A stretch of 59,523 nt of DNA, counting the filler, from Platydemus manokwari (lineage: Eukaryota): NCBI GenBank assembly GCA_037951405.1. It is 5 parts of 5 records of this genome, joined end to end, with 100 filler letters (N's around TTAATTAATTAA, not from the genome) between each part and the next. Parts side by side here need not be neighbours in the genome. Positions count along the whole stretch, not along the records: positions 24,997 to 35,482 come from JBBMOY011130330.1; 4 more parts are not named here. One strand, 5' to 3'. The position numbers were made by a program, and so were the translations under genes. Positions 1 to 37,700 of this stretch are shown here, piece by piece; the stretch's first letter is position 1, and every line of letters begins with the position of its first letter. The notes beneath the pieces are model-generated. The model was given only the letters and a program-made list of their open reading frames with translations, did no database searches and was not told the DNA's origin.

Positions 1-1705
1 CAATGGCAAGTATCTTATTATATTCATATTGAACCAATGATAATATCGGTTATAATAATTTGTCATTGCAATATCTTAAATTATAATTATTCCATTTCCT
101 GACTGGTTGTCAAATAGATTTCTTAAATAATCAATGATTATTTAGAAAAATTATAATAATAATTCGCGCCAATATGCTATTATATTAACAAGTAATGAAT
201 ATGAAAGGGGACAATCCCTACATATTTAATATGTAGAAAAGAACAATCTTCCATTTTCATGATTCAAACAATGATTACGTAAAAAATGAAAATATTTAAG
301 GTTAACTAAAATAATTTTTAATTTCAACATTTAATGATGGAAAAATGATGGGGAGTGTGCACCTCTCATACCACGAATAATATTTTAGCAAACAAAATCA
401 AAATAACGCTTGTGACAAGTGGGGATTTTCCATTAAAATATAAATTTTAATACAAGCTCATAATTAAATTAAATTATAATTAATAGGTTTCAGATCATAT
501 TTAATAATTATAGTGATTCCTAATTAGCGAATATCAAATTTTTGGAAAACCAAAGCAATTATATATTGATTTTTGTCTTTCCCTATTTCCGGTTGTTTTT
601 AATATATAAGTGTATAGATTTGGTTTGGCTTTTATCGGTTTTGTATTTGATCGTTTTGATTATGAAAAGAATTTATCAATTATTTATCGATTGTTTATTG
701 AAGCATAAAATGTATCAAATCCTAACAATCTTCATAATCGATAATCAAATCCATGTACCTATGTGTCTTCTATCTTCTTCAAAAATATTACTCCAAAAAC
801 GATCCACTTTTCTGCTATTTTCGTCACCAACAATAGCTCGTACAAACTAATCACCATCTCTCAACAGCACATCCTCTTAATAATACTCTTTAATTATTAT
901 GGATCTTCCCTGTCATTCGACTCATGAACTCGACATCTAATAATTTACTCTATCTGGATCTAAAATCAAAAAGTATCACAAACCCTCTTATCTTAATGCA
1001 TTGCTTACTAGATACGACTGACACGCCATCCCTCTACATATAACGTATTCTAAAAAAACATTGTAGGAATAGTTCTGGCACTACATCAAAATAATGAAAT
1101 AATTGTTCTGCGCTAATTACGATTATTAAATAGCCTTGTTTTATTATTGATTCCTTTGAACATCTTATCCTATTATGCATTCATTTTAAATAAATATTAG
1201 ATTATTTTCCGCCTTCTTTTTTGAAAATAACATGCTCACATTTTTATAATTATTTCGTTATTTTTTTATAATTATTTAAAATTATTTTTTTTAAAATGTG
1301 AGAGATTTCAGTAATGTTTTAAGTAATATCATTTTATAAATTTTAATATTAAATATAATTATTTAAATATATTTTTAAATTATTAATTTAAAAATATCTA
1401 AATTTGAATTATTTATGGTATTTTTAAATAAACCTGACACATTTAATCTTCGTTTACTTTAAGTTCAGTTCCCGTGTAAAGAGTATTAATCGAAAGAGAA
1501 AATTAATCTAGCTGTCTCTACATTGGTAGACGTGATAGAACTGATAACAGCTATCTCTGATAATCTCTAATAATTCTTAAAACAATTTTCCTTCCATAAA
1601 ATAAAATTATCATTCATTCTCATATATTCAGACACACGTACACTTTCATTCATACATCAATTGTCAGTTAAATACCTACTTAAACCTAATTTATAGGTCT
1701 AAACG

Positions 1706-2027
1706 CCTCCCCTCAAGACCCTTGTCTTTTAACGCAGTTTCGTTTTACTCTTTCTACATCTTCCTTTTTTTGCTTCATCATGGTCATTCATGGCATTAAA
1801 CTGACTTTGCTCCAGATTTTGAATTAAATGATCTGTTTGACTGTATATTCCGTCTGTGTAGGTTCTGAAAGTTCTCAAAGTATCGTGGTAGTGGTGCACT
1901 GTTATCATTTTTTCGGGAGAAGATAGTAAAAGCTTGGATGTATACTGTGCATTGATATTTAATTGGTTCATCTGAGAATTAATGTATTGTCAGTCTTCTT
2001 TTTACCGATGTCAATATAGGACACTTC
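1706..2027 (-). mobile_element. Degenerate 3' end of a Ty3/gypsy pol (integrase C-terminus, chromodomain-like) plus polypurine tract
   Basis: A minus-strand frame with stops reads TDNTLILR*TN*ISMHSIHPSFYYLL..EPTQTEYTVKQII, resembling the IHPVFHVSLL and EYEVE-type motifs of chromodomain-bearing gypsy integrases. It is followed by PPT GAGGGGAGG (1714-1706) and a putative LTR start. Confidence 0.4.
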
Positions 2028-4204
2028 ATCAGTACAGTAATTTATATGGAATAGGAAACTAACAACAGTACACAGGCTTTTTATTAGATATTGTTATTTG
2101 TTATTATTGATTAGATCTGTTCAGTCTTATATCGTTATTGATTATCTCGAATTTCTTGTATTGCTCCATTGATATATTTCATTGATAGTTATTTAAAATA
2201 AAAGTAAATTAACTGTTTCGAAACAATGAAGTTGTTAAAAATAAAAAAGAAAGTAAAATAAATATCCATATTCGACAAGAAGAATGAATATTCTATCCAA
2301 TAATCAATAATTTCACATGTGTACAAAGTCATCAATTCGCTTTCAAAAATATATTTGATAATAAAAATGTGAACAAGATTCGAAAATGTAGGAACGAATT
2401 AATTTATAAAAGTTAGATAAAAATCCAAAAAATTTATTGACAAGCATTGAATAGATTCAATACTATTCAATTATCATTGTGAAGAACTACTTCAAAGCAG
2501 TATGTAATAAAAACTGTATCTGTGACAGATTGTTAACAAGACACGACATATTTAAGTGAAAATTTCAAATGGTTTATAATGGAATCTCTATTTTTTTTCA
2601 ATGGCGTCGAATTTTTTTTCCATGGCGTCGAATTTGTTTTGTATGTTGTTATTGTTATTATTATTTTGTTTTTGGTAACAGCTTTTGGGAAAATGTGTTG
2701 TTATGATTTCAATTGAATATCGAATGAGTCTTCTGAACAAATTACTGTCCCATGTCACTGCAATGTTCTCGACTATTTCAGATTGAATGTCTAATATTTA
2801 TCATTTTGTTTTGTTTATGAAATCCAGTAATTATAATAAAAACAACAATCAGTGCTGCGGGTGCGTATTAGAACGATGTATTTGTCAAGATACTGCGGAA
2901 AATAAACTGAGATCAATAACCAATTATCATGATTATTAGCTAAATTCTATTGATTGTTAAAACTGTTTCAAGAATTAAGAATGCGATTATCACAGCCTAA
3001 TCCCAGAAATTGATAAGCTGATAAAAGTACCAGAATGTGTGTTATATTCATTTCAATTTCCAGAAATTCCATACGCATACATAATTATAATTGATTCATC
3101 TCATTATTTGTAAAATTTATAAATATATTATTAATATATTATGAATAAGATAACAGTATGCCAATTTGTTATGATAGAAGTTCTTTAAATATCTTTATTT
3201 TGCCTTCTCATTAGTTTAGTTTATTTTTAAATTTAGAGAGATAGCTAAGGATGGAAGTGGTTTTTGTTGAAATACATATTCGCTCCATTGATTGTTGTTT
3301 AATTATACCCATTGATTTATTCAGACTTGTCATTGTTAGGATTTAAGATAATTAATTTAAATCATTTGTGCGTGAAAATTATAACAACAGCTTTTGTAAA
3401 AATAGGTCGATAAAAACCGAACGATCAAGTACTTTAATAGCACCTATGAAAAAAATATTTGAGATCATTGAAAAAAACAGAAAATTCCATTATGAACAAA
3501 ATGGAATTTTCAATCAATTGTCAAGATTTATTGTATCTCTTAACTTATGTCTAAAGTTAGAAAAGGATTCTTTGCTCCGTCGTAATTTTCTGTAAATTGC
3601 AATTTGACTTGCATTGACTTGTTTATCAAATTTGTAGCTCTACTGTACTTCATAATTCATTTCCCACAACTCAAATTTTTCACAATTTCTTAAATAAAAA
3701 TTCAAAATGTTTTTAAAGAATATAATTAGATAAACTAATAAGATTTTTGCTTTCAATAAATTAAAATTTTAATTTGATTTATAAATGTTGTCTCGTGACC
3801 CAAAATTCGAAGATTAAATCAAAAATAACATTTTTTCAAACAAAAATGTGATTATTAGTGATTTGATATGAGTTAAATCGATCACTTTCGATTCTTTCTG
3901 TTTCTGTTCAAAGATTGTCGATTCTCACATTGGCTGTGTTTGAAAACTTGAATTTAAATGTTATTCATTTAATGTTATGGCGGTATTGATGTTTCCTCCT
4001 TAAACAATTTATTTACGATTCAGTAAATTATAAGATTGCCAGAACAGAAACAAAAATACGTTAGGAAAATTAGCAAATTTTCCACTGGCAATTAATTTAG
4101 TTGATAGAATTATTTTCAACATATGTTTGAATCATTATTGGTTAAAAATGGTGTTGCAGAAACAATTACATAAGGCACGTGTTTCAAATCATTTTCATTT
4201 CATT

Positions 4205-4518
4205 ATGAGTTCAACATTATTGTTTTTAATATTGCAGTAAGATTTTCATTTAACTAATTTTTCGATTATATTATTAACGATTTGATCAGGGTGACTTGTT
4301 TGAAACAAATATTTGTGGAGACTGCAGTTCTGACTGGTTGCACTGATTATAAGGACCAAAATTGTCAATGGTGCATCGATAATTATTCCACCAGAGATGC
4401 TTGTATGAAATGTGTTGGAGATTACAATCTGATAAAATGTTGCTTTAATCCAACTCTTAGATATTTTATGAATCCGAAACAATCGATATGCCTATCTGTC
4501 AAAGCGAATAATCAATAA
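4205..4518 (+). CDS. Small secreted 8-cysteine peptide (86 aa, 2 exons)
   Basis: Exon 4205-4236, 53-nt GTAAG..CAG intron 4237-4289, exon 4290-4518, splicing in frame to MSSTLLFLILQVTCLKQIFVETAVLTGCTDYKDQNCQWCIDNYSTRDACMKCVGDYNLIKCCFNPTLRYFMNPKQSICLSVKANNQ*. Hydrophobic N-terminus, AATAAA overlapping the stop, and an upstream in-frame ATG at 4148. Confidence 0.7.
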
Positions 4519-7500
4519 ATTGAATATTGATTAATTTAACTATGTTAACTAAGAACCTTTGTTATCAATAATTTTCAATATTAAAAAGAATCCTAGATTG
4601 AGTTACTCGTATTTAGAGAATTATAATATAATGAATGATAATATAATGAGAAGAAAAGAAAATTAAGAATATTAAATATATCCTGCTCATATAAAACCCT
4701 CCATGTATTGAAGACTACTATCAAATCAATATATAAACTGGTGCGGTTTTCTTGGTTTATTATGATTTAAAATTATTCGAAATACGTCAGGTTTTAAAAC
4801 ATTTTATACCTAATTATTATTAAACAAATGAAATATACTCCCTAATTTGAGACTATGTTATTAAACAATATTGACATTTTCGGTTAGCTAACAAAAATTT
4901 TTAACAGTTTTATTATTAAATATAAGATAAATAAAAAACAAAATGATTTTATAAAATCAGAATTTTGTCAGAGCAATTCACAGCACAATGCCAAATTCAG
5001 ATATAATTTTAATTCAAAGCAGATCACAAGGATACAGAGTTTTCTTGAATTGATTATCAAGTTCAAACGTGCAAAAGATACACTCTATCAATCTCACTTT
5101 CTAATTTAATTTTTAATTTTAAACCTTAACCATGCAATTATTTGAAATGTTTAGTCCAGCAAAGGATGGTTTAGATATCGAACCTTGTTTGTGCCGATAA
5201 AGGTGTTTGTGACGAATTTTTTCACGATTATTGACTGGTCTAAAATATATAAGATATTCATTTCTGTTGGCGTTCTCGATAAAAAAAATAGATTTCTTTT
5301 CTCTTACAGTGAATAATTCTTTTGATTTCCAATCACATTTATACAAAACTATTATCTGAGTGCAAAAAATACTGCCATTTCTTCAAGATTTTAATCTAAT
5401 GATTATATCGTGTCATTATCACAATAGGAACCCAATCGAAATTGATAAAGTAATCTATATTAAAACGATACCCACATAATGTACATTATTTCCGATATAA
5501 TTAAGTAGTTTGGGTGAATTACTTTAAAATTGGCATCGCAATTAATTTTTTCACAAGTTGATTTTATTCTCCTTGTCAAGAAATATTTAAAGAAGCTCTA
5601 ACAAAGCACTTTTGCTATTAAAATTTGAATGATACCAAGCGAATTATATCGAGATACATTGTGATTTGTGATGATACAAAAATCATTAAGTCAAAGATCA
5701 TTTGAAATGAAGTAACTGCAGATAAGAAATACATATTTGCTAATATGATGAGAATTACAGAATTTTGGCAGTGAATTGAATTATGAATATTTGAGTCGAA
5801 CATTTATTGGGGTGTGAATGTGACAAAAGCAAAGTTTGATTGGTGCATGATATTATGGATGTGTTATCAGTTATCCGTTAGCAATATCTGTTGTAACTTG
5901 TTGATTTTGATAATTAATCAGAGCTATATTCTTGAAATATAATCGCCATATTCGACCATTACAATTGACAACTATTCCAATCAATAATCCCAAGCTCGAG
6001 TTGACAGCTCTGAAAATATTATTGATAATTTTCCAATCTGCATCATTATGATTGTTACACCAGTCAATATTGATAATTTGATTGAGAAAATTATTAAGAT
6101 CTTTGAATTTCGATCAATTAAATTTGATTGATACAGATTCATTGTTTCTTTTAATGATTTGTTTAATAATAGCGAATTAATTAAATAAAAATCAATAACT
6201 GAAAGATTATCGAAATTGCAGTTATTCTAATCATATTAAAAATATACAAAAATTTACTGAATGATCGATAATGAATAATAAAAAAATATATTTGAAAAAA
6301 ACCTCGAGTTTGCTTTATGATCTGAAGTATCTAATCTGTTCTCAATAAAACATCGGATTAATCAATATAAGAGTTATAAATTATTCAAATATATTTAAAC
6401 ATTAGAAAGCTTAGTGGTCACAAACTGTATGGATTTCGATTCAATAATAATAATGAATAGAAAATAAAATCCAGTAAATGCAATCTGAGGAAGTTTTGTT
6501 TAAATAGCAGTCGAATGAAATTTCTTAAATTAAGAGGGAATTTTGTGAAATATATAAATGATAACGACAAGAAATGAAAATGAAATATACGTCCACGTTT
6601 TATCTTGAAACGTGTTACAGTTCTGCCTTGATTTCAGATAAGTTATTCTTAAGCTGAAACTACATGTTTCCAAAATGTTTCATAAAATCGGTGTGACATG
6701 GCAATATTTAGATGATATTTTTCAAATAAAAACAATACCCTATCTAATAAAGGATTATATTCTTGCTTCTTATCAATTATAGTTTCAATCAGAACCTTCA
6801 ACAATTGTTGTCTTAATCTGCATCGTAAAATGCAAATCAGATCAGATGATCTCATAATACATAAGATGAGAAGTATTAGGCCTGCCATCTAAAAATAATT
6901 TCATCAATAAATGTTATCCATTTCCTTAAATATTCCTTCCTCCAGGTCTAGTCATCCTCTATAATATTGATTTTCTTCCACCTAACCAGCAATAAGGAAC
7001 TTTACCATATGTCACTGGTAACCAATACAAGCATGTGTATCTACAACAGCAAATTATCACTCCTAGTATCCAGAATATTAAAGCAAACACACAAACTGTC
7101 AAAGATTCATAAATCGTTTTGATGAAGGATTGATGATAGAAAATGTTCAAGGGGAATTCATGGTAAAAATCGTCACCCAACATGGACAAGAAAATAATGC
7201 AAAATATGTGATGATCACCATCCAATTACAATCGATAAATTTGCGGGTACATTTATAATTAGATAAATATTTTGAATTAGAAATTCTCTCAATATTATTT
7301 ACTGCTTATAAATCTGATTAGAATATTAATGATGGTAATCATAAATCTTTAGATCATGAGAAATCCATCTATGGTGGCGCATTGCAAAAATAAATGAAAT
7401 TCCTAAAAGTACCAGAGAATTCAAAAGCAAAGGAATTATTACATTATCTTAAACACAAAACCCAATATTATTTTATTTGTTTTAATATTACTTAATATAT

Positions 7501-11552: not shown

Positions 11553-14500
11553 AATGTTTTGTTTTTCGCGCTACATGTAACAAGACAAATCAAAGAATCA
11601 TCTTGGTATAGTCCACTCAGAATGAAACTCAACTCGTGGATTGAAGAGAGCGATCATATATTGGACGTTACTAAAACAATGGATCCACCGCAAGCTATAC
11701 AATCTCTGGAAAATCACATAAAGGAAAATGAATCAATAAATACATATATTGAAGAATTATCAATGCAAATACAATCTTGTGAAGACGATGATTTAAAACA
11801 AGAAGCCATTAATTTACAAACAGAATGCCACGTAATGGGAAAATAGAATATTTTATATTATTATTGATTTTATTGATTTTTTAAGGATAAATCGACAAAA
11901 TTCACAGAATCAATCAAATATCAACAATATCGTTTATTAGAAAGCGAATGTGTTCAACTTATTCGAAACACGGAAAAGCAACTGGATCGTGAGGAGGTGA
12001 TGGCGAAAAATGTCACCTTAGATAAAATAAAGATAATAATTCAAGAACATAGCGTAACACAATTAAGCAGAATGGCTTCATTTCTTCTAATTTTAATTTT
12101 AGAACTACTTCGAAAGCAATGATTTTCCAAGTGGTAGTAAGGAATATCTACAACAAATGAAGGCTCTCATTCTACAATTCCCTCCAAATCAGATGATAAT
12201 CAGTGGAACAGAAATGTTAGAGCAGCAATGCTTAGATGTCGAAACAAGAATCAATCGAGTAGGAAGTGATTTGAGAAATATCCAGTTATTACTTGAAGAG
12301 AAAATGCAAAAGTAAGAATTAATTCCTTTCCACAACTCCATGGAAACATTGTCATAGATTGTCTCAACTAAATATTTGGGTTTCTAATTTCGAAACCATG
12401 ACTTCCGATGTAGATGTGAAAGATCTCAATATATCATCAGACCAATACGATTTGGTATTGAATAGATTAACCACTCTCTATCCTGAAATCGACACAATGA
12501 GAGAATCTGCAATGGAATTACAAAATTATCCACACTTTTCCGACGACGAAGAAAGCTTGGAAAAAACGATTTCCGATTTTGAATCGATCACTCCGGCTCT
12601 TGAATCTTTAAAAGCAAAAGGTTTATTTAAGTGTTTTATTCACATATTTTGTATTGATTTTGTCCTTATTTTATTGATATTTTCTGAGACCCAAGAAAAG
12701 AAGCTATTATCATCATCTCCTTATTTCTCTACTCTTCGTTTCTCTATTCTCGAGTGAAGAATTAAATATTATAATTTTATTATTAATAATAAAAATTTTT
12801 ATCGTCTGAATAATCTATCGAAAAAGATGTCATTTTCATGAATTAAATTAAAAATTGATCGATATTAGCAGTAGCTGGATTTTTCATCACCATTTACAGA
12901 TGACCAAAAATCTAGTTACATCAAAATGATTCTAGATATTCTGAATGATACTTGTCACATCTCTTATATGTATACATTGACAATAAAACCGTATTGAATG
13001 AAGCACTCTTGTGTTCGTATATATCAGCCAAAATTGGATTGTGATCAATTCAATACAATGATATGAGAGACTCCATCAAAAATTGAAACTGTCATTGTAC
13101 AGCTTTATTGAATGATTTTTGTATCAACAGATCACGTTGCTATTGATATTCTATCTCCTTCAATTGTCGACGAAGCCATTCTTGAAGAATGTTGTTTGCA
13201 AATGCAACATAAACTTGTAAATATGATTTCACGAAATCACTGTCAACTGGAAACCCAAGGTAGCAATTTGAGTTGTTTATAGCGTTCTAAACCGTTTAAT
13301 AATAACCACTTAACCTTGCTGGTGTTACTCTGAATTTAAAATTTTGGTATTTACAGAAATTGTATATCGAAAATTCCTACCCTTATATCTGGTTGGTGGG
13401 CACTTCGATGGAAGAAGGCTTCATATATGCATGTGATACGAAAGTTTGAGAACGATTGACAAAATATTTTATAAAATAATTTAAAACTTGATTCCGTCAC
13501 TTTTATAATTAATCTTCGATGATAAACTCGTTTAGTTTTCCAGAAAGAGCCACATAATATTACCTGTTTCATAATTCTTCATCTTTGTCTAATAGACAAA
13601 GGTTCTCTGTAAGAAGTCGTATTAATAGTATGAATCAAATCAGATTTGGCAAGTTTTTATTTGAACTCCCATATCACATCAAATATTTGAAATATTACTT
13701 TTATTAATCGTTTGTTGAATTTATTGATTGAAACGGTGTTCCTTTAATTTTATATAAATTACAATGGATCTGTAACATTCTAATAATAAAATACAAATGA
13801 CACGTATTTTCTAGTAACATTCAGTGTATTTGTTGCTATAAGAGACGAACATAGTATCCATATGTGCTTGTGAACTATATTGTAAATTCACTTGAAGAAA
13901 ACAGTGGTTTTTTTCCAATATTTGACAGAATTCTGTTGGATAGGTAGACAAAACAATGAAAAAATATATCCCCTGTAAGCCACCTATCTTGTCTTAATCT
14001 TCTTTATATCCTCTATTTAGTCTCAAAATCTTTCTCCTTCTTTTCCGTTATTTTTCAGAGAATTGTCTTCTCAGAAACGAAACCTAATGCATGGTCGCCA
14101 TGTTAACCGCTACTATTTTGAAAAACCACTCATTAAAATCGAACTGAGAAACCGCGGCACAAAATTATATTTAAATACAAATATTTCAACAAATTAATTC
14201 AATTTTATAACAGACATAATTATTCCAGAATCAAAATTTATAGAAAATTAAATCTTTAAAAATTTTAAAAATAAGCAATTAACAAGCTTAACATTACTTG
14301 AATTGAAAATCTATTCATCACCATTCATTATAAATTGCTGCCAATCATTTTCGTTTATTGGTGAAAATCAAAAGAATTTTGAATTCAATTTATTCGAAAG
14401 TTTAATATCACTTCAACAAATGTGATTGGTTAAATCATTGATTGGCTGAATTGATGGGAAAGATTTTATTAATTCAAGATTTAAGATGGGATTTAATTTA

Positions 14501-25330: not shown

Positions 25331-27481
25331 AAACTTAAATTTAAATTTAGATAAAAAAAATAAATATATTTAGATGGCTAATAAATATATTAATGTTAGA
25401 AAATATATTTATTCGATTACTTGTGAGTACCTTTTTCTTAATGTTTCCATTTTGGAATAATAGTAATTATTTGCAATGTTTATTTGAGATGTTGTCTTAT
25501 TTTATGAAATTTGTAGTAAAATAGTCAGAGAATTTGAATATATTAAATAGCAGACAGTAGCATGATTCTGACAAGTGCGGTAGACATTTAATTACTTTAA
25601 CGCTATTTAATAATTATCGTATAACAAAATAAGTGTACTCAATAAATATTCTTACTTTCACTTCACCATTGCCTTTTTGGTTAAAATCGATTGAGAGGAA
25701 TGGGATGCGTTTACTATTGCCAAGTCATTCCAAGTCAACCAAGAATTGGTAATGCAGCAGTTTTCAAATGTTAATTCGTATTCTCGGCACAATACTTAAT
25801 CATTCAAAACTTTTGTTACCTACATTCTTTTCCAGGTAATTAATGGTTACTGCCTGCTCTGCATAATTTTTAAATGTTTGCTAATTATTTCATAAACAAT
25901 AATTTGAATTGAAAAAATAATTAAACATATTATTGATTTTCATAAAATGTGAAATAAAATATAATTGTCGGGGTTCTAGCCCAATTAGTTACTTAAAACA
26001 ATTAATTTACATTGAAAACTATTTGTATAACATCTGCACGGCAGTACGTATAAAATGTGTATTAATTTTTATTGATTTTTATTTAATCTGCATGCATTTT
26101 TATGATTGGATTTTTGAGCAACAACTATTCTGAAATATTGATATTTATAATAATTATTATTTATATATTACATATATAATATTATATATTTACATATATA
26201 ATATATGTAAAATTATAATACCAATAAAATTACCAATATCAAATCCACCGATCTCTAAAAATAATAAGTTAATTTATAAAATTTTAATACAAAATAAGTT
26301 ATCGCGCATTAACGGCGACAAATAAATCATCATGTTTCTGCGCATGAAAATTCTATAGCAGAATAAAATATATCACTCGATTAAATTTAATCGAGAAATA
26401 TTTTCTCTGTCTAAATAAATTTATTCAGAGAGAATTTCTCTCACCAGTGAATAAATTCTATCGATAAAATAATAAATATTCATTGTCATTAAATTTAATA
26501 ACAGATAATATCTGCAAATGATTCATTGCCAATATATAAGCAGTGATTTCAATCAACACTGCCATAATTTTCACGGACATAGTTTTTTTGACACCACTTC
26601 GCTGCTATTATTTTCGCTGTCACAATTCCATAGACGACGTTACATCAAGTGGAGAAGAACCATAATTCAAATATCCATTCGACCCACTGACGAAGATTAT
26701 CAGGTGCTGAAGATCAATTTTCCTGTATATGCCCGGCATTTGCTGGAAGACCCAAAGTAAGACCGTACCTATAAAATACCAATCTATATTATATACAGTA
26801 GCTTGTATCTCATACTATAGAGTTTGTTGCACAAATATCTTTATTATTCGGTTTTACTCCATGAGAAGGACGTATCAACCGCTATCATCTTTAAATTGTA
26901 AACCATATTGAAAACTTGTTGGTGCCTAGTGTAGTTTTAACATCAATTTTTAATTTATTTATTTTATGTTTGTTAATTAGTATTGGTGTCATATTTAATA
27001 AATATTTGTAACATTGAAGCCTTAGTTTTCTGAATCATATAGGGATCATTAAATCATAGTTTGTAGTAAAGAAATAAAGTTAGTAGTTTTAAAAGTGGTT
27101 AAATATTTTTGAGACTGACTATTAGGTTAAATAAAATATATCACTACTGCCAAACCTATTGTCATCATACAATAAGGCTGTGCGAGATAAAAGGACAACA
27201 ATATAAGGTAAATTACGCCTGTGACCTTAATAAAGAACTCATAGGGACTGATTATTGCGGTAGTGATATCAAATAGGATTATGCTTATTAAAACAAATAA
27301 TTCAATAAGGCCCGAACGTAACATAATAAAAACAATTTTGGCTAATTATTTCATAAGAAATAATTTGAAATATATTATTGATTTTCTTAAAATGTTCAAT
27401 AAAATATAATATAATCAAAAATTGAATTGCAAATTATTCTTTTTTACCAGATAATATATTTCATTTCAAATAAATTTTTTT

Positions 27482-28215
27482 TTAATTAATTGGACTGAAT
27501 TTCATTGTAAAAAAGTCCACGATATGGCTAAAGTACATCGGTATTGGTCCATCAAATAAATTTACCAAAACGCATATTTCGTGTGCTTCAGAATAGTGAG
27601 CCGCTAGACAAAATGATCTCTCCGTGCAACTAGTTATAAAATTTTATTAAAAATACAAGAAATTTCTAACTATAAAAATTATAACTTTTTATAACATTCT
27701 ATAACGGTCGACGTAAAATTTTCGTAACAAGATTCTATTGAATCTTCAGTGAATTCTATTTTAGGGTCAATTTCCATGTATGTGCTTCGAAAATTTCTCA
27801 AAAGATCTTTTTCATATTTGCATACAACTCGAGTTAGATTAGTACATTGCATATTCAATAATGTGTATTGTATTTGGGCGACACATTGGTCATAACCACG
27901 CTGTGGTGAATTATGTCCAGAAATGTTATAGCCTTTATGGTCTTCTTTAAATCTATATACTCCACTGTAGATATAATTCCATTTTGTTTGGTTTGACATT
28001 TTGACAAATGCTGGTGATCTAGGAACCATTACTTCATATGGTTCGATTAAATTGCCATTAATTAGATGACAGAAACGCAAACCATAACAATATGACATAG
28101 TGTCAAAAGTACGATACACGCATTTACCACATTCAGGTAAAAATGGTGGTGGGCAATCATTGCTCTTTATATGAGAGACAAATATCAGAATTAGAGAAAT
28201 ATCAATCACAATCAT
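27482..28215 (-). CDS. Secreted C-type lectin-like + PAN/Apple domain protein (2 exons)
   Basis: ATG 28215, exon to 27686, 56-nt GT-AG intron 27685-27630, exon 27629-27482. Signal peptide MIVIDISLILIFVSHIKS; CTLD-like Cys pattern (CPPPF..CGKCVY..FC..GNL..C..C..VVCKY); after splicing VIECYKNCTERSFCLAAHYSEAHEICVL gives the PAN/Apple C-x3-C-x5-C..C pattern. Confidence 0.75.
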
Positions 28216-28490
28216 TTCTAAAATCAACCAAAAATGTTAATATTTATCACAATGATTTTATTAATGAATCATTCAATATTATTATAATGATAATAATGAT
28301 TTATTATTGATATGTTCGAAAATCTCTCAGCCTTTAGAAAATATTATATAAGATAAATAATTGATAAAATAGAATCTTAAATAATGTTTAACTATATACA
28401 GCTATATACAAATAAATATACAACATAGTACATACAAATCCATAAAACATTTCGCATTTTCCATTCTTCAATTATTGAAGAATAAATCAC

Positions 28491-30009
28491 TTACTTGAAA
28501 ATATTGAAATATTTTGTAACAAATATTGTGACACGTATATCAAATAAATATAAAAAAATGTTGTTACAAGTGACCAATAATATACGAATAATAATGTTGT
28601 TGACCATTGTTGTATTTCGAATCCATAATAATATTGATTCCTTATTAAAATAAATCACAATTTTATTAAAACTGGAAATCACTAGCTTCTATTATGTTGA
28701 TACCTTATGGATTTTGTAACAAATAAAATACTAAATATGAAATTATTATTATTACTGTTTTTATTGTGAAAAATATTAATTATTATTAAAACATTTTTGA
28801 TCATGATGTGTATTGTTTAATCATCTTGAAAATTATATTGTAATTAGTTTGAATTTATAAAGAGAATAAAAACGAGGGCATGCTATTTTTACAATAAATA
28901 AGGCCACACATCAAGAAATTGAAATCAATTGAAATTGTAATGTACTATTGTGCTATAAGGCGACGCCACAAATACCCAAAAATTTCTTTGAAATCAATCA
29001 ATATCGAGGAAATCATGAGAAAGAGTGGTTACACAAATTTGGAATAATGCAAACATTTCAAATAGTTACGTCACTAGAGACGAGTCAGATATGTTGGAAA
29101 TATTAATATCAGTTAGTAAAGCTTCACAAGATGATCCAAATCTCTGAAAACTTGTTCGGCTTAATGTAGAAAGAGTCATAATTTAGTTGATTTAATGTTT
29201 TCAATCTACATAGAACGTATTATAATATAAAACAATTTAATTAATCTAAATGATGTGAAGTTTATGAAAAGGATTATCAACATAAAAAGAACAATAGTGG
29301 CTCCACAGAATATATTTGAAAGTGTACAATAGATATTTATACAATCCGTATCTAAAATGTACAATCTCTTTAATGAAACTGGAAACAAATACAAAAAGTA
29401 ACGTGAATATTACCAATCAAATAAGTAAGAGCTGCAAATATTAAAATTATAATGTTAGACACAAATCAGCAACAATGAATAAATTATTATAATATAGAAA
29501 TTATGTTTACTTTAATAAATTATGAAATTAAGAATAAAATAAATCCACAAGTAGAAGATGAATTATGAATAAAGCTAAAAATAGGAAAAAGAAAAGATTA
29601 ATATTGTATAAATAAATATACATATGATGATTTCAAAATTTAAATTTCAAAATTTTGTAAAATCAATATCAAAATATATTAAATAACTGTACTTAAATTC
29701 TCCCCAATTATCTGTCAAGCTAATGCCAAATAGGATTCATACAGTCCTTGCGACAGACTTTCACAAAATATTTGGAATAGAGCTGATACGGAAATTGACT
29801 TTACTAAATAAAGAAACAGAAAATTAACAAGACAGATACAGGACGGTTTGTGAGTAAACAGCAGAAATGACTGATAAAATTAGTAAAAATAGTAAATGAA
29901 ACAAACAAATATTTGTCAATATAGAATTATAAAAAGTACTTCGAAGCATGGAATACACATCAAGTTTGTTGGTAAAAATACATACGCAAAATTCATCGAA
30001 AATTATCAT
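28491..30009 (-). pseudogene. Degenerate multi-pass membrane protein, possibly rhodopsin-like GPCR
   Basis: Successive hydrophobic fragments with many stops (NICLFHLLFLLILSVI; IFCESL..YLALA; IVLFMLIILFINF; LILIFPTYLTR; CNNIFLYLF). Confidence 0.3.
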
Positions 30010-30782
30010 TATATAGAGTAAATAAAAAACTCATATCAATAATAAGTCTAATTTGTGAATTTATGTTATCATTATTTCCAATTTGTCTATGTCATTGTTA
30101 GTTATCATGTTAACAAAATGTATAATTAATCAAATATAAATTTTATAATTAATATTATGTAACCATTTGTTTGAGTTATAAAATAACTGTAATTCTGCAA
30201 TTCACGGAATAAAATTTATATTTCACTCACAAAACCAGGAACAAGAATTTTAGAATATATTTGCATATTTTTTTGAATAATTTGCAATATCATTAACATA
30301 TTGATTTTCAAAGCTTCACTTACGAGAGAAATCTACATATCTATATAAAATAAACTAATAAAATTTACCATTGAAAGTCTTTATCACATTGTTTGTTAGA
30401 TGACTACAATAATGAAAATTAACTTGTATACATTAAAATCAATATTTGAAACATCTCCCTGCTTATTTTTAAAATTATTATTCACTTTTATTCTGATTTT
30501 ATGCAGTAGAAAAATTCAAATATTGAAGTATGGTGACGAACAGCACTTGACACAAGTAGTCGATAGTGATATTTAAACGAATTATAAAAAAAACTCTTAA
30601 TCCTTCGAGACTCCGTGTACATACCAAATCCAATATTTAGAGAAAATTTTATAAGAAATTAAGTAATTTGTAAAAGTACAAATGTACTGAAAATAGTAAT
30701 TATTATAGTGCTCTAACTTTTTATGAATGGATAATATGATTATGTTTTAGTGGTTTTTGATTTGTATACATGACATGATAGT

Positions 30783-31294
30783 TGTTAGCCGCTTTTATTT
30801 TGAAAACCACACATGAAAACAAACTGAAAAGTCAAGACACTAATAATCTATTTAAATACAAATATTTTATGAAATAAATTTAATTTATATTAATGTATCT
30901 TTATTTAATTCATTTAAAATATATCGGATCCCTTTTCTTTAAAATCTTTGATGTTGGTAATTGCTAATTTATCGAATACTCAATAATTTTCATTACACGG
31001 AAAGTCGAAATCTTCTATCTTTTTACGTCATCTTTTATATCCCCTTTTTATCTCTTTTACAACTTCTTTATATCTTCCTTATATCTTCTTTATATGTTCT
31101 CAATATAGTCTCAGCATCTTCCTCCTCCTTTTCTTTAATCGTTTCACGATCGACTTCAAATGCGTGGTCACCATGTTAATGGCTTCTATTTAAAAAAATC
31201 ACACATTAATAACGAACTGCCAAGTCAAGACACCAATCATCTATTTAAATACAAATATTTAAACAAAAAAAATTTATTTTGTATAAATATGACT
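30783..31294 (-). mobile_element. TRIM copy B: LTR-PBS-interior-PPT-LTR (~510 bp)
   Basis: 5' LTR ~31294-31174 ending TTAACA, PBS TGGTGACCACGCA 31173-31161, purine-rich interior, PPT AAAGAAAAGGGA ~30940-30929, and 3' LTR ending CTAACA at 30783. The two LTRs align directly (shared AAGTCAAGACAC..ATCTATTTAAATACAAATATTT). Confidence 0.85.
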
Positions 31295-34139
31295 TTATAC
31301 AAAATTAGAATTAAATTCGAACTAAATTTGAATTAAAAATTTAATCCATTTAAAAAATTTCACAATCGGAATGATCCTTTAAATGATAAAAATAAGAAAG
31401 TTTAATTGAAGCTTCTGAAAATTAAATTAAAATAAATTTGGTTTGATAAAGATGCTGGGATAAGAAAAATTTCTTTTAAGTTTTATTTGCATTCGGGAAC
31501 TATTTTATATCGCATAATGTTTTCATTAAGAATTTCATTAAGTGTTCTGAAAAATATAAAATTAAAAACGAAAAGAAATAATAATCGAAAATGCTTTAAT
31601 TACTTGATTTTCGAGGTTAGAAACAACAAAATGGAACAATCATCTTTGTAAAGATACTTATTGATTAATTATCAAATTTAACTTGCAAAAATGATCAGAT
31701 TAGTTTGGATCAATATGCTTGAAGAGTGCAAGTGTTTATTAAAAATAGAAATTACCGGAGTTCACATTATAAATGTGCAATTTGTAAGAGATGTTAATCA
31801 ATTCGTATAATATAATCAGAAGAATTTGTATTATCGTTTATAATAAGGATTAACTATCACTCTATAATCTTCAACTAAGCTGGACTGCAGACAAGTAAAG
31901 TTGTTGCTGCATCTACGCTTGGATATAAAATAATATTTGAAATATAAATAATAAAGTCAATAAAATATCAAGATAAAATATATTAATCAATAAATGAATT
32001 AATAATAAATGATTTGAACAACAATGATTTTAAAAAACTTAAATAAATATAAATCTTAAATATAAATCTATTGCGGGAGCAAAAGTACCCTCTATTAACT
32101 GTAAAATGCATACCGCTTAGGTGAACTTTTAAGATGTGCTTTGTAATTTAAAAGGATCACAAAGCTAAAACTAGCCTTGGGTCTAGATTTAATTATAATC
32201 AAAAATTTACTCATTGGATAGATAATGTTCAAAAATATCTTCAGTAATCCGCCTCAGGAAATAATTTCTTCAGAACGTATCGTTTAATTTAGTAATTCAA
32301 ACGTATCGTACAAACTAATAATTAGCTTCTTGGGACGTTTAGTAGAAATTAACAATCTGCTTCTTCAAACGTGTCATACAATTCAAATCCTGCTTGTCGA
32401 TAAATTTCGTAGGCTTTTATATTATTTAATGAGCTTTGTGTGTCTACATTTGTAACTATCATTAGCAACATTTACACGTCACTGCTAAATTTAGTAATAA
32501 CTAGTAATAACGCTATTGTAGAAGAAAAGAGTTGTGTAGTCAAGTAAACAGTAAATGGCGTACTGCTAAAGTGTTCGTATAAGAATCTTATGACAAAAGT
32601 GAAAGTGGGGAACTGACAGTAGTGCTTATGAGATTTTAATAGACCACAAGGCTAAAATTAGCCGTGGGTCGGAAATAAGTTAAACAGATAATAAAATTAC
32701 TCATGATAAATTTCTTCCAAAATTGATGAACTGAATGGGCATGTAATAAAAGATAAGCTTCTTTAAAATTTGAGGATCCAAATGAGCAATCAAAGTTGAC
32801 TTCTTCGAAATCTGATAATTCAAATTTGCATACAATTGAAAAAATAAATAGCTGCGGAATTGAGCTTGCAAAAATTTATACAATTTTATAACTGTAGGTA
32901 GTCGAAGTGCGAGTGCTCTGTTTCTGCCAGTATATATATACTATTTCGTGTCTTATAGTGAATCATGCATATTTTTGATATTTTTGGTAACATTTTATGC
33001 TTAGTAGCATATGTTGCTAATTTTAGCATATGTACATCATAAGTTACCATTTTTAGTCCAAGTCTCTATTTATAGCAACTAGTGCTGATATTTACGTTTT
33101 CCATTTATCGGAGGTTCTATTTTTAGATTTCGATTCGGATTTTTCTAATGACCTTAATGTTGAATAGTTTTGGTGTAAAAAAACAAATTTAAAAATTTTA
33201 TGAATATTTTTGTAATTTCTGACGTTACTATTTTATTAATTTGATACTTAATTTGAGAAAATTTTTATATCAATTTAAAATTTTTTTGGTTAATAAGCAA
33301 TAAATTAAGATCAAAACCATCAAGCGTGATATCTTACTATAGTTTGTTTAATAAGCAAGATTCTTATCTTAAATAAACAACGAAAAAGGATCACATTTTA
33401 TGGAGAAAGTAGTGAAAGCAGCCTTACCTGGATTTAATGAGATTAGATACACCAAATGATTTACAACAATGGTACTTTATGTTACTTAATTAATTTTTAT
33501 GTGAAATTCTAAATTAGGAATTTGGCTTCTTTATCTGCCGTGGGACATTGTTTTAGCAACATCTTTTAGTGAAATAGTATCAATTTATATGTTATTTTTG
33601 TTGGTATTATTACAGTTTAATTGGTATAGGTGAGGAATTTTTGATTTAATTTTAAGATAAATTCATCATTTACCAGATATTTTGATAATATTTCAAATTA
33701 ATTAATTAATATTAATTGAAGACCAAAATTAGGATCTAACATAATTTTTATTTACATTTTTAAAATAATTGTTAAGTAATTATTTGCTAATTATTATTTT
33801 ACTAAATTAACCACATGATAACCGTTTAAAATCATTTCGTCAATGACAGATTGAACAATTATTTATAATCAGTCGGATTTGAAGCTGAAAAATAGTTCAA
33901 TAACATCGCACAGTTAGTAATTATTATGAGTGTTTTTAGTGTTGCACTTGGATTGGCATCATCGGGGCTTGTGGTTACTTATCTATTTTTCAAAAGATTT
34001 AACTATTGGTCTCAATTTGTTCCCCACCCAAGCGATCAGAACACGGATCCACGAGCCAATAGTTTCAGAACAGAAGTTCACTTCAAGCAGAGAGAAACCA
34101 ATGTATTCGATGAAATACATGGCCAAGAAACTTTACAAT

Positions 34140-35482
34140 AAGTGTCGAGGCATGCCAGACCCAAAAGAAGAGCGATTACGTGGAGACAATTGCTTTTGCT
34201 GTGGAGAAAGCGGACACTATAGAAGCTAGTGCTCCCTAAGGCACAAGAGTTTAATATGCGGAAAAGAAGGCCATCATTTCAGATCATGTCATCTAATACG
34301 AGGTACCAGACACAGTAGAAAGGAAAGAAACGATAAATTAAGGTTGTGATAGCAAAAAGAATTTGTCCCAATTTTATTGGATGTGTTGACACGATGACTG
34401 CATTCGGGATTCAGCTGAAAGAAGTGGCCACAACCGATTCATCACAATTTAACGACAAATGTACAGACGTGGAAAGATCGAAACACAAAATAGAAACGAT
34501 AAAAACTCGGAACACGGGCAGAATTGGAAGACTTATCGAAGAATATGAAAATATATTCATGGTTTCAAATTGGATCTAGGCAGAACCACTTTAGTTGTTC
34601 ACGATATTATAATTACTGGAAATCCTATTTAGCTGCTATAATACCGAAAGATTATGCCGCTTAATTTGTCAAGACAATGCACGAGGAGTTCTGCCACTTA
34701 GACTCAAAGAAAACCTTCACATATTTGAACGACAGTTTTTATTGGCCAGACATGTTCAACACCATCAAAAGGATACTGAAAGAATGTATGATATGTGCAA
34801 AGAGAAAGATTGATCAATCCAGAACGAAGGTGTTTCTGCTTCCTCGGTCGGTTAGACTCTGAGTTTCAAGAGCAAATCGTGGTGGACATTGCACAAATGG
34901 ACGCGATGCATAGTAACAAGAAAGTACCTAGTAGTCATTATCGACTGATTCAGCAAGCTAGTGAGCCTCACTGCTACATCTAAGCCAGACGAAAAGACAA
35001 TTTTCCAGGTCATTTTGAACTCGTGAATTTATCGTTTTGGAAAGCCAAAGAGCATTCTATCTTATAACGGGAAACAATTTGGAGGTAAATTTATGAGAGA
35101 GGTGTGTTCAAAATTGGGTATCAAACAGGAATTCATCTCACCATGCCAGCATCAATCAAACGGTATAGCAGAAAGCGTCATCATGACGATACGAGATATG
35201 ATAACAACTACTTTAAAGGGTAATAGCAATGTTCTGCATCAACGCAACACATCAATCAACAACGAAGTTCTCGCCTTTCGGAAGATCAATGTTCATGCAG
35301 ATGTGAGCCATGATAATCAAACTCGAGACGATATTGCACCAGCACCTAGAGGAAATTCTAAGGTGAAAGCCGACATAATGTCTAATCGAGACAGGAAAAA
35401 AAAACACATCGGGTTTTTCAGATGGGAGAGAAGGTGCTAGTTCGCGTAGATCCCAATAAGAGAGAGAAGAATGGATAGCAGT
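34140..35482 (+). mobile_element. Degenerate, internally deleted Ty3/gypsy LTR retrotransposon (gag CCHC knuckles, protease end, integrase)
   Basis: CFCCGESGHYRS*C and ICGKEGHHFRSC knuckles; IGCVDTMTAFGIQL protease tail; RLIEEYENIF..LGRTTLVVHDI RT leader; H2C2 integrase finger (HEEFCH..YWPDM..CMIC); rve core (IYRFGKPKSILS..QF..ISPCQHQSNGIAE). Stops and frameshifts; truncated by the gap. Confidence 0.9.
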
Positions 35483-37103: not shown

Positions 37104-37700
37104 TTCCCCTTTCTTTAAAATCTTTGATATCAATATATAAATATTTTAGTATTTCTTCTCAGCTTTATATTATCTCAATATCTTCTGCATATCTTATTCA
37201 TAACATCACTAAATCTTCTTTACATTTCAACTATGCATCCATGCCATGGAAATTCTCAGAATTGAATCAAAATGTATGGTCGTCATGGAAGCCGTAACTA
37301 GATGATAAAGCAAGAACTGAAATCGAGCAGAAAAGTCACGATATCAAATTATATTTAAATTTCAATAATCCAGAAAAATTAATATTTTAAAAAATATTCG
37401 CATTTCCCTTTCTTTAAAATCTTGATCACCTCTGAATTATTAATTATCTCTTTCAAATTCTCCAGATATTTATCAATATAAAATTTTGTATTTCTTCTCA
37501 GCTTTAAAAAATCTCAAAATCTTTTGTATATCTTATTTATAACTTCTACAAATCTCCTTTACATCACTTGTATTTCTTCTTCCTTCTATTCTATGCTTGC
37601 ATTTTATAGCCATTATCAGAATCGAACTGAAATCGAACCTAGAAGTCACGCAGCATTGGAATTATGAAAATCAAATTTAAAAATTTTAATTTATTATAAT
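37104..37700 (-). mobile_element. TRIM copy C, tandem-array form (two interiors sharing a central LTR)
   Basis: Two PPTs (CCCTTTCTTTAAAATCTT on + at ~37107 and ~37406), two homologous interiors (GTATTTCTTCTCAGCTTTA), PBS TGACGACCATACA 37285-37273, central LTR 37402-37286 (TG..CA), and a second LTR remnant ~37624-37700. Confidence 0.65.

What the first reader, a model, noticed from the sequence alone, without database searches (positions are those of the whole stretch)
30783..31294. A non-coding miniature LTR retrotransposon (TRIM) family; copy B is the most complete
Seen: on the minus strand, a ~115-120-bp LTR ending TTAACA is directly followed by TGGTGACCACGCA, then ~245 bp of purine-rich DNA with no sense-strand ORF, a PPT (AAAGAAAAGGGA) and a second diverged LTR. 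The LTR carries a TATA-like GTATTTAAATA and a CAGT initiator-like motif. Homologous units occur at 13995-14212, 37104-37700 and 44337-44738, on three independent scaffold pieces. Established: LTR-PBS-short interior-PPT-LTR without genes defines TRIMs, which are common in plants and only sporadically described in animals (e.g. ta-TRIM of taeniid cestodes, highly expressed in stem cells). Inference: the PBS consensus TGG(C/T)GACCA(C/T) pairs with a tRNA ending ..GUGGUCGCCA (tRNA-Arg-like), and four loci in ~59 kb imply a very high-copy family mobilised in trans by a gypsy partner.
Basis: partly seen in the sequence, partly recalled or inferred. Interest (0 to 1): 0.82.

Follow-up and report, generated by a model that had tools for sequence, protein, structure and literature searches.

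The report
Old miniature LTR retrotransposon (TRIM) copy
This is a dead, roughly 590-base non-coding "miniature" LTR retrotransposon whose terminal repeat occurs thousands of times in the same genome. It is an ordinary kind of selfish DNA, though one rarely described in animals.

Summary
On the minus strand, two direct repeats (31370-31174 and 30928-30783) share 121 of 146 aligned bases (K2P 0.195). They enclose 245 nt of non-coding DNA.

- **PBS:** the interior starts with TGGTGACCACG directly after the LTR's terminal CA.
- **PPT:** the interior ends with AAAGAAAAGGGA directly before the second LTR.
- **LTR length:** An 11-nt tandem expansion in the 5' LTR accounts for most of the difference.
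- **Promoter signals:** each LTR has a TATA-like box 33 nt upstream of a CAGT initiator.
- **Family size:** contigs of an independent run of the same organism pile up exactly between 30783 and about 31510. That is 3,596 contigs at 80% likeness or more. Summed depth reaches about 44,000 in the LTR core, against 8-13 for single-copy flanks.
- **Other copies:** some carry the same PPT-to-LTR junction.

Three caveats apply. Depth is patchy, so the LTR core far outnumbers this particular interior. The commonest relatives read TGGTTAATAAT, not the tRNA-type PBS. No target-site duplication is seen.

The PBS pairs over 11 nt (one G·U) with the tRNA-Arg(UCG) 3' end known from another animal; the host's own tRNAs could not be checked. 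A degraded gypsy-like element nearby shows no link to it.

Verdict: a new member of a known kind (TRIM), and this copy is old and inactive.

The parts
31174..31370 (-). 5' LTR, 197 nt. It starts TCCGATTGTG and ends TTAACA.
   Evidence: Global alignment with the 3' LTR gives 121/146 identical, K2P 0.195. blastn gives E 1.5e-23. Contigs of other copies join 31364/31355 to 30934, which is the PPT-to-LTR-start junction.
31302..31337 (-). 11-nt tandem expansion (3.3 copies) inside the U3 part of the 5' LTR. It is absent from the 3' LTR.
   Evidence: Tandem Repeats Finder. It corresponds to the 42-column gap in the LTR alignment.
31242..31251 (-). TATA-like box TATTTAAATA of the 5' LTR. The twin in the 3' LTR is at 30849-30858.
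   Evidence: Sequence. It lies in the 20-nt block that is identical in both LTRs.
31216..31219 (-). CAGT initiator-like motif. Its A at 31218 is 33 nt downstream of the first T of the TATA-like box, so this is the inferred U3/R border. The twin in the 3' LTR is at 30823-30826, within TCAGTT.
   Evidence: Sequence. The function is inferred from spacing only.
31163..31173 (-). Primer-binding-site-like TGGTGACCACG, abutting the LTR's terminal CA.
   Evidence: It is the only exact TGGTGACCAC in the window. It is the reverse complement, with one G·U, of the 3' end CGTGGTCGCCA of a published tRNA-Arg(UCG).
30941..31162 (-). Non-coding, purine-rich interior.
   Evidence: 67% purine and no sense ORF longer than 35 codons. 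The RNA fold is no better than shuffles, z +1.2. No Rfam family and no tRNA were found.
31034..31100 (-). 11-nt tandem repeat (about 6 copies; GAAGATATAAA on the minus strand) inside the interior.
   Evidence: Tandem Repeats Finder. It coincides with a depth peak in the bin 31055-31111.
30929..30940 (-). Polypurine tract AAAGAAAAGGGA, abutting the 3' LTR.
   Evidence: Sequence; 100% purine. Other copies have AAAGAAAG... at the same junction (tables 5 and 5c).
30783..30928 (-). 3' LTR, 146 nt, ending CTAACA. It contains AATAAA at 30794-30799.
   Evidence: Depth in run X1 jumps from 37 to 5,028 in the bin that holds 30783.
31371..31510 (-). Adjacent repeated segment 'U', relation to the element unknown. 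It is either another repeat or the 3' end of a different interior that shares this LTR.
   Evidence: Depth runs 5,766, then 2,928, then 1,580, and falls to 48 beyond 31510. It is no more similar to the interior than random windows of the piece.

Best explanation
Window 31370-30783 (minus strand, 588 nt) is one old, inactive copy of a non-autonomous LTR retrotransposon of the TRIM type.

**Shown**
- Two direct LTRs ending in CA.
- A tRNA-type primer-binding site immediately after the 5' LTR.
- A polypurine tract immediately before the 3' LTR.
- No coding capacity.
- An LTR present in thousands of copies in the same organism.
- Other copies that show the same interior-to-LTR junctions.

**Inferred mechanism**
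1. RNA polymerase II starts at the CAGT initiator, 33 nt downstream of the TATA-like box in the 5' LTR, and the transcript ends in the 3' LTR.
2. The RNA is packaged into particles made by an autonomous Ty3/gypsy-type (or other LTR) element.
3. The 3' end of a tRNA-Arg(UCG)-like tRNA primes minus-strand DNA at the PBS.
4. The PPT primes the plus strand.
5. The partner's integrase inserts the cDNA.

This copy is long dead. Its LTRs differ at 17% of aligned sites plus indels, its PBS carries a C-to-T change relative to the perfect tRNA-Arg complement, and no target-site duplication survives.

The family is heterogeneous. The LTR core is far more abundant than this interior, so there are probably many solo LTRs, or several different interiors share one LTR.
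For: - **LTR pair:** E 1.5e-23; 121/146 identical, K2P 0.195.
- **PBS:** it is unique in the window and sits exactly at the LTR end. It is complementary to the tRNA-Arg(UCG) 3' end printed in bioRxiv 10.1101/2021.02.06.430044.
- **PPT:** it abuts the 3' LTR.
- **No coding or small-RNA content:** no sense ORF; no tRNA, 5S or hammerhead ribozyme.
- **Run X1 of the same organism:** 3,596 contigs at 80% likeness or more fall on 30783-31510. Depth at 30841-30844 is about 44,000 in more than 110 contig variants, against 8-13 for contigs that match the flanks perfectly.
- **Independent decay:** family-wide differences from this copy fall at different places in each LTR. For example, the majority reads AA at 31220-31221, as the 3' LTR does. 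That fits two LTRs decaying independently from one source.
- **Shared junctions:** joints 31364/31355 to 30934 and 31130/31134 to 30782/30822 show the same junctions in other copies.
- **Definition:** size and layout match the published TRIM definition (PMC6934838; PMC3532108; PMC4558846).
Against: - No TSD. The 5' flank ends ATCAT and the 3' flank starts ACTAT; ATCAT recurs there only after a 3-nt offset.
- Both LTRs of this copy start TC, not TG. Other copies seem to start TG (table 5c).
- Contigs that leave the alignment read TGGTTAATAAT after the LTR end. So the tRNA-type PBS is not the majority state among those relatives.
- Depth at 30965-30987 is only about 80-115, so few copies share this whole interior at 80% or more.
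- A repeated segment (31371-31510) abuts the 5' LTR and is unexplained.
- Host tRNAs, a partner element, transcripts and full-length sister copies were not seen here.
Confidence: 0.8

Rival explanations
1. The LTRs belong to a family of long, coding LTR retrotransposons. This short unit is a rare, internally deleted derivative, present in one or a few copies, and not a member of an amplifying TRIM family.
For: LTR-core depth (about 44,000) is hundreds of times the mid-interior depth (about 80-115 at 30965-30987). The interior shows only patchy conservation, with contigs leaving the alignment at 31063 and 31139. Degraded gypsy-like sequence exists in the neighbourhood.
Against: More than 50 contig variants share the interior core 31063-31139, and 30-39 variants share the PPT-proximal part, at depths in the thousands. 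Several contigs carry the same PPT-to-LTR junction, and some have an even shorter interior (joint 30952 to 31079). No coding remnant lies in the interior. The nearby gypsy remnant shares no LTR or PBS with it.
Confidence: 0.12
2. The locus is the remnant of an LTR-sharing tandem (interior'-LTR-interior-LTR). The repeated segment 31371-31510 would be the 3' end of a second, unrelated interior type that uses the same LTR. Such tandems arise by unequal crossing-over or template switching between co-packaged RNAs.
For: Segment U is repeated at a depth like that of the interior, and its depth rises towards the LTR. Its last bases (TTTAAAGGA) loosely resemble the PPT region. Ant TRIMs with shared LTRs but unrelated interiors are on record (PMC3532108), as are tandem ta-TRIMs (PMC4558846).
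Against: U is no more similar to the interior than random windows of the piece: score 43 against a background of 40.6 ± 10, and 47 of 500 shuffles do as well. It has no real polypurine tract. No third LTR is detectable upstream, and depth falls to background beyond 31510.
Confidence: 0.2
3. It is not a retroelement. It is two neighbouring copies of a short dispersed repeat or satellite monomer that sit about 400 nt apart by chance, with fortuitous PBS-like and PPT-like strings.
For: The genome is AT-rich and repeat-rich. Low-complexity stretches inflate some depth bins. There is no TSD.
Against: A GC-rich 11-mer matching a tRNA 3' end lies exactly at the repeat's end, in a piece of 28% GC, and a pure purine run lies exactly at the other repeat's start. 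With roughly a few thousand LTR copies, two in the same orientation within 400 nt are not expected by chance. There is no periodic continuation on either side. Other copies have the same junctions.
Confidence: 0.03

Closest known systems
PbTRIM of ants (Pogonomyrmex barbatus; PMC3532108)
   Same: An animal TRIM of almost the same size: 480-781 bp with LTRs of 152-184 bp, against 588 bp with LTRs of 146-197 bp here. The PBS comes immediately after the 5' LTR and a PPT before the 3' LTR. There is a TATA box in U3 and a non-coding interior. It is abundant, with solo LTRs, and relatives share LTRs but have unrelated interiors.
   Different: The PbTRIM PBS matches tRNA-Leu, not tRNA-Arg. PbTRIM copies are young, with near-identical LTRs and 4-bp TSDs (mostly ATAT). 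This copy has 17% LTR divergence and no TSD.
ta-TRIM of taeniid tapeworms (PMC4558846)
   Same: A non-autonomous LTR element in an animal with TG...CA LTRs, a PBS, a PPT, no ORF, solo LTRs and occasional tandems.
   Different: ta-TRIM is larger, with LTRs of about 198 bp and an interior of about 590 bp. Its PBS matches tRNA-Leu and lies 4 nt from the LTR, and its PPT lies 3 nt from the LTR. It has a candidate partner (lennie) and massive stem-cell expression. Neither a partner nor expression was shown here.
biv-TRIM of bivalves (PMC6934838)
   Same: A short element with terminal direct repeats in animals that meets the TRIM definition (<1000 bp, repeats of 100-250 bp).
   Different: biv-TRIM has no canonical PBS. 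This copy has a clear tRNA-type PBS, although some of its relatives may not.
Plant TRIMs, and the special non-autonomous LTR elements (Cassandra, Helenus/Ajax, retrozymes)
   Same: The same overall LTR-PBS-interior-PPT-LTR layout and dependence on a partner in trans.
   Different: Plant TRIMs use a tRNA-Met PBS and make 5-bp TSDs. Cassandra, Helenus and Ajax carry 5S- or tRNA-derived LTRs, and retrozymes carry hammerhead ribozymes. None of these was detected here (ARAGORN; Rfam at E up to 1).

Membership tests
TRIM (terminal-repeat retrotransposon in miniature) | Two direct terminal repeats of about 100-250 bp | tested here: met
   197 and 146 nt; 121/146 identical; E 1.5e-23.
TRIM (terminal-repeat retrotransposon in miniature) | Whole element under about 1 kb, with an interior that has no coding capacity | tested here: met
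   588 nt in all. The longest stop-free sense stretch is 35 codons. An antisense ORF has no relatives.
TRIM (terminal-repeat retrotransposon in miniature) | [quoted passage not shown] | tested here: inconclusive
   TGGTGACCACG abuts the LTR. It pairs over 11 nt (one G·U) with a published human tRNA-Arg(UCG) 3' end. The host's tRNAs were not available, and many relatives read TGGTTAATAAT instead.
TRIM (terminal-repeat retrotransposon in miniature) | [quoted passage not shown] | tested here: met
   AAAGAAAAGGGA at 30940-30929. Similar tracts stand at the same junction in other copies.
TRIM (terminal-repeat retrotransposon in miniature) | LTR termini 5'-TG...CA-3' | tested here: inconclusive
   Both LTRs end in CA. 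Both start TC (TCCGAT), with TGTG 6 nt further in within the 5' LTR. Other copies appear to start TG.
TRIM (terminal-repeat retrotransposon in miniature) | Target-site duplication of 4-5 bp | tested here: not met
   The flanks are ATCAT and ACTAT. With K2P 0.195 between the LTRs, decay of a TSD is expected, so this counts only weakly against membership.
TRIM (terminal-repeat retrotransposon in miniature) | Dispersed multi-copy family, including copies with the same structure | tested here: inconclusive
   The LTR core and parts of the interior are high copy, and the same junctions occur in other contigs. No complete sister copy could be read, and mid-interior depth is low.
ta-TRIM / PbTRIM (specific animal families) | PBS complementary to tRNA-Leu, and sequence similarity to those families | tested here: not met
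   The PBS here is of the tRNA-Arg type, against tRNA-Leu in both families. Direct sequence comparison was not possible because no reference sequences were held.
Retrozyme / Cassandra / Helenus-Ajax | A hammerhead ribozyme, 5S rRNA or tRNA-derived sequence inside the LTR | tested here: not met
   The Rfam scan at E up to 1 found no such family in the piece. ARAGORN found no tRNA.

The most novel reading that the evidence does not exclude
One roughly 110-nt LTR promoter core, present in thousands of copies, may serve as a shared module for several unrelated non-coding interiors in an animal genome. The most numerous relatives would then have lost a tRNA-type PBS (they read TGGTTAATAAT after the LTR). 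That would imply either another way of priming reverse transcription or spread by a route other than classical retrotransposition. As in ta-TRIM, the dispersed LTR promoters might then shape the host transcriptome.
Probability: 0.12. Interest if true: 0.6.

Novelty: new member of a known kind. Interest (0 to 1): 0.35.

Why it matters
TRIMs are well known in plants. In animals, the papers read here describe only a few families (ants, taeniid tapeworms, bivalves). A further animal family would add to that short list, especially one with a clear tRNA-Arg-type PBS and an LTR present in thousands of copies in a very AT-rich genome. It would also give annotators a repeat that standard LTR finders miss because of its small size. 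If young copies exist, their dispersed LTR promoters could drive non-coding or fusion transcripts, as ta-TRIM does. Their PBS and LTR ends would also identify the autonomous partner. The copy examined here is itself an inert fossil.

Tried and rejected
- **Other copies in this piece:** none. blastn with word size 7 found only the LTR pair.
- **Other copies in public collections:** an LTR-core pattern gave 0 hits in metagenome contigs, genome contigs and viral contigs.
- **Sister copies through called proteins:** the 72-aa antisense ORF found no homologues. The two window ORFs tried, the integrase-fragment ORF and the lectin-like ORF, are not on record as genes.
- **Organism identity, all inconclusive:** the 182-aa lectin-like ORF had no relatives. 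Atlas look-alikes were weak, at 0.79-0.93, with mixed taxa. Pfam recognised only the integrase zinc domain.
- **Tandem-unit hypothesis for 31371-31700:** rejected at detectable similarity. The 26-nt 'third LTR' hit at 31637-31662 is background level.
- **Link between the element and the gypsy remnant:** the only match is 60 nt at 75% (33238-33293), in AT-rich low-complexity sequence and not collinear with an LTR end. The PBS and leader comparison was not significant, with 226 of 1000 shuffles doing as well.
- **Packaging structure:** the RNA fold of the predicted transcript leader plus interior is no better than shuffles, z +1.2.
- **TSD:** searched at both candidate LTR starts (31370 and 31364). 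None found.

Full report
**What is in the sequence**

Read on the minus strand, the stretch 31370-30783 has the full layout of a miniature LTR retrotransposon.
- Two direct repeats stand 393-436 nt apart.
- A global alignment of 31370-31174 with 30928-30783 gives 121 identical of 146 aligned positions (82.9%). There are 10 transitions, 15 transversions and 51 gap columns, and K2P is 0.195.
- blastn of the unit against the whole 10.5-kb piece finds this pair at E = 1.5e-23 and nothing else of note.
- Most of the length difference between the repeats (197 against 146 nt) is an 11-nt tandem expansion at 31302-31337 in the 5' copy.
The rest of the description is accurate.

**Boundaries and priming signals**

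- Homology between the two repeats ends at the same ...TAACA in both (31174 and 30783).
- In the 5' copy the next bases are TGGTGACCACG (31173-31163). This is a 64%-GC string in a piece of 28% GC, and it is the only exact TGGTGACCAC in the window.
- Homology begins at TCCGAT in both repeats (31370 and 30928). In the 3' copy it is preceded directly by the all-purine AAAGAAAAGGGA (30940-30929).
- The 220 nt between PBS and PPT are 67% purine. They contain about six copies of an 11-nt tandem repeat (31034-31100). No sense-strand stretch without a stop exceeds 35 codons.
- ARAGORN finds no tRNA. An Rfam scan at E up to 1 finds no hammerhead, 5S or other family in the element. This excludes retrozyme-, Cassandra- and Helenus-type elements.
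- The predicted transcript folds no better than shuffled sequence, z +1.2.

**Promoter-like features**

- Each LTR has TATTTAAATA (31251-31242 and 30858-30849) inside a 20-nt block that is identical in both copies.
- A CAGT lies downstream (31219-31216 and 30826-30823), with its A 33 nt from the first T of the TATA-like box. That spacing suits a Pol II TATA/initiator pair.
- This would leave an R-U5 of about 45 nt.
- The 3' LTR has AATAAA at 30799-30794. The 5' LTR and the majority of relatives do not, so the polyadenylation signal is unclear.
- These functions are inferred, not shown.

**The primer**

- The reverse complement of the PBS is CGTGGTCACCA.
- A published human tRNA-Arg(UCG) sequence ends ...cccttcgtggtcgcca (bioRxiv 10.1101/2021.02.06.430044).
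- The element's RNA would therefore pair with such a tRNA over 11 nt, with one G·U opposite the discriminator base.
- A tRNA with discriminator A and the same acceptor stem would also fit. From my own knowledge, vertebrate tRNA-Trp primes at TGGTGACCCCG, which is close to this PBS.
- One paper notes that databases disagree on labelling TGGCGACCACGAAGGGAC as Arg or Trp (PMC4724089).
- The host's tRNAs could not be examined, so tRNA-Arg remains a plausible assignment, not a tested one.

**Family evidence from reads**

One public run (X1) holds part of the stretch. Its contigs include pieces identical to the flanks (30246-30442, 30415-30851, 31390-31889), so it is the same organism, possibly the same sample. 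Laid at 80% likeness or more, 3,596 contigs fall on the 1.7-kb stretch.

| Region | Summed depth in X1 |
|---|---|
| Single contigs identical to the flanks | 8-13 |
| Left flank bins, 30542-30769 | 13-37 |
| Bin holding the LTR end at 30783 | 5,028 |
| LTR cores (bin means) | 26,000-33,000 |
| LTR core at 30841-30844 | about 44,000, in more than 110 contig variants |
| Beyond 31510 | 48 |

- The majority of these contigs differ from this copy at different sites in each LTR. For example, they read AA at 31220-31221, as the 3' LTR does, and C and A at 30841 and 30844, where the 5' LTR also has a C at the first of the two homologous places. This is what is expected if both LTRs have drifted independently from one source.
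- Joints show the same architecture in other copies. The LTR start (31364 or 31355) is joined to the PPT (30934) with purine-rich letters between. The interior (31130 or 31134) is joined to the LTR end (30782 or 30822). Some copies have a shorter interior (30952 joined to 31079).

**What does not fit neatly**

1. Depth is patchy. It is thousands in the LTR core, in the interior core 31063-31139 (more than 50 contig variants) and next to the PPT. It is only about 80-170 at 30893-30902 and 30965-30987. So the LTR core is far commoner than this whole interior. That points to many solo LTRs, several interiors sharing one LTR, or LTRs shared with larger elements.
2. The 41 contigs that leave the alignment at 31194 read the LTR end followed by TGGTTAATAAT. 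The 58 that leave at 31139 read a different leader. So among those relatives the tRNA-type PBS is not the majority state. Contigs that align straight through are not in these sets, so copies with the PBS may still be numerous.
3. No TSD is present. ATCAT precedes the 5' LTR and ACTAT follows the 3' LTR. ATCAT recurs 3 nt further on, which I do not accept as a TSD.
4. Both LTRs start TC rather than TG.
5. A repeated 140-nt segment (31371-31510) abuts the 5' LTR. I tested whether it is a partial upstream unit. Its best local alignment with the interior scores 43, against 35 ± 5 for shuffles (47 of 500 as good) and 40.6 ± 10 for other windows of the piece. So there is no detectable homology, and its nature stays open.

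**Surroundings**

- About 2.6 kb away, on the plus strand (33926-35482, cut by the piece's end), lies a degraded Ty3/gypsy-like element.
- It has two CCHC knuckles and an RT-start motif, followed at once by the integrase H2C2 domain (Pfam PF17921, E 1.4e-11). An integrase core follows, broken by stops and frameshifts.
- It has lost protease and RT. It shares no significant LTR, PBS or leader similarity with the miniature element.
- It shows that gypsy-type elements lived in this genome. It is not evidence for a partner.

**Comparison with what is known**

- By the published definition, a TRIM is under 1 kb with terminal repeats of 100-250 bp, and its interior begins with a PBS and ends with a PPT (PMC6934838). 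This copy works like a TRIM and meets the structural criteria.
- The closest in size and layout is PbTRIM of ants: 480-781 bp, LTRs of 152-184 bp, PBS for tRNA-Leu, 4-bp TSDs (PMC3532108).
- ta-TRIM of taeniid tapeworms is larger and also uses tRNA-Leu (PMC4558846).
- biv-TRIM lacks a canonical PBS.
- The tRNA-Arg-type PBS argues for an independent origin from those families.
- The organism is hidden from me and its proteins find no relatives. I therefore cannot say whether the family is already catalogued for this species.

**Verdict**

This particular copy is an ancient fossil. The claims about the primer tRNA, the copy number of the complete unit, and a gypsy partner remain inferences. It is a new member of a known kind, of moderate interest to transposon specialists and genome annotators.

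Noticed in passing
window 33926-35482 (+): A degraded, internally deleted Ty3/gypsy-like element. It has two CCHC zinc knuckles (~34190-34300) and an RT-start motif (~34580-34630), followed directly by the integrase H2C2 domain (34677-34862; Pfam E 1.4e-11). An integrase core follows, with stops, frameshifts and a D-to-Y change in the SDNG-like motif. It is cut by the end of the piece.
   Followed up: partly
window 31371-31510: A repeated segment that abuts the 5' LTR. Its depth in run X1 is 1,580-5,766 against 8-13 for single copy, and it ends sharply at about 31510. It is not detectably related to the element's interior.
   Followed up: partly
window 27679-28227 (-): A 182-aa ORF whose cysteine and tryptophan pattern recalls a C-type lectin domain. 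The best Atlas look-alikes are Lectin_C clusters at only 0.79. There is no Pfam hit and no relative in the word search.
   Followed up: partly
window 25873-25965 and 27334-27410: A direct repeat of about 95 nt, roughly 90% identical with a 16-nt indel, with copies 1.45 kb apart. It may be the ends of another small element.
   Followed up: partly
window 31739-31900: Another stretch with raised depth (320-545) in run X1. It indicates a further repeat family upstream of the element.
   Followed up: no
window 26419-26489 (-): A weak match to the C/D-box snoRNA family snoZ7 (25 bits, E 0.61, gathering score 43). It is probably chance.
   Followed up: no
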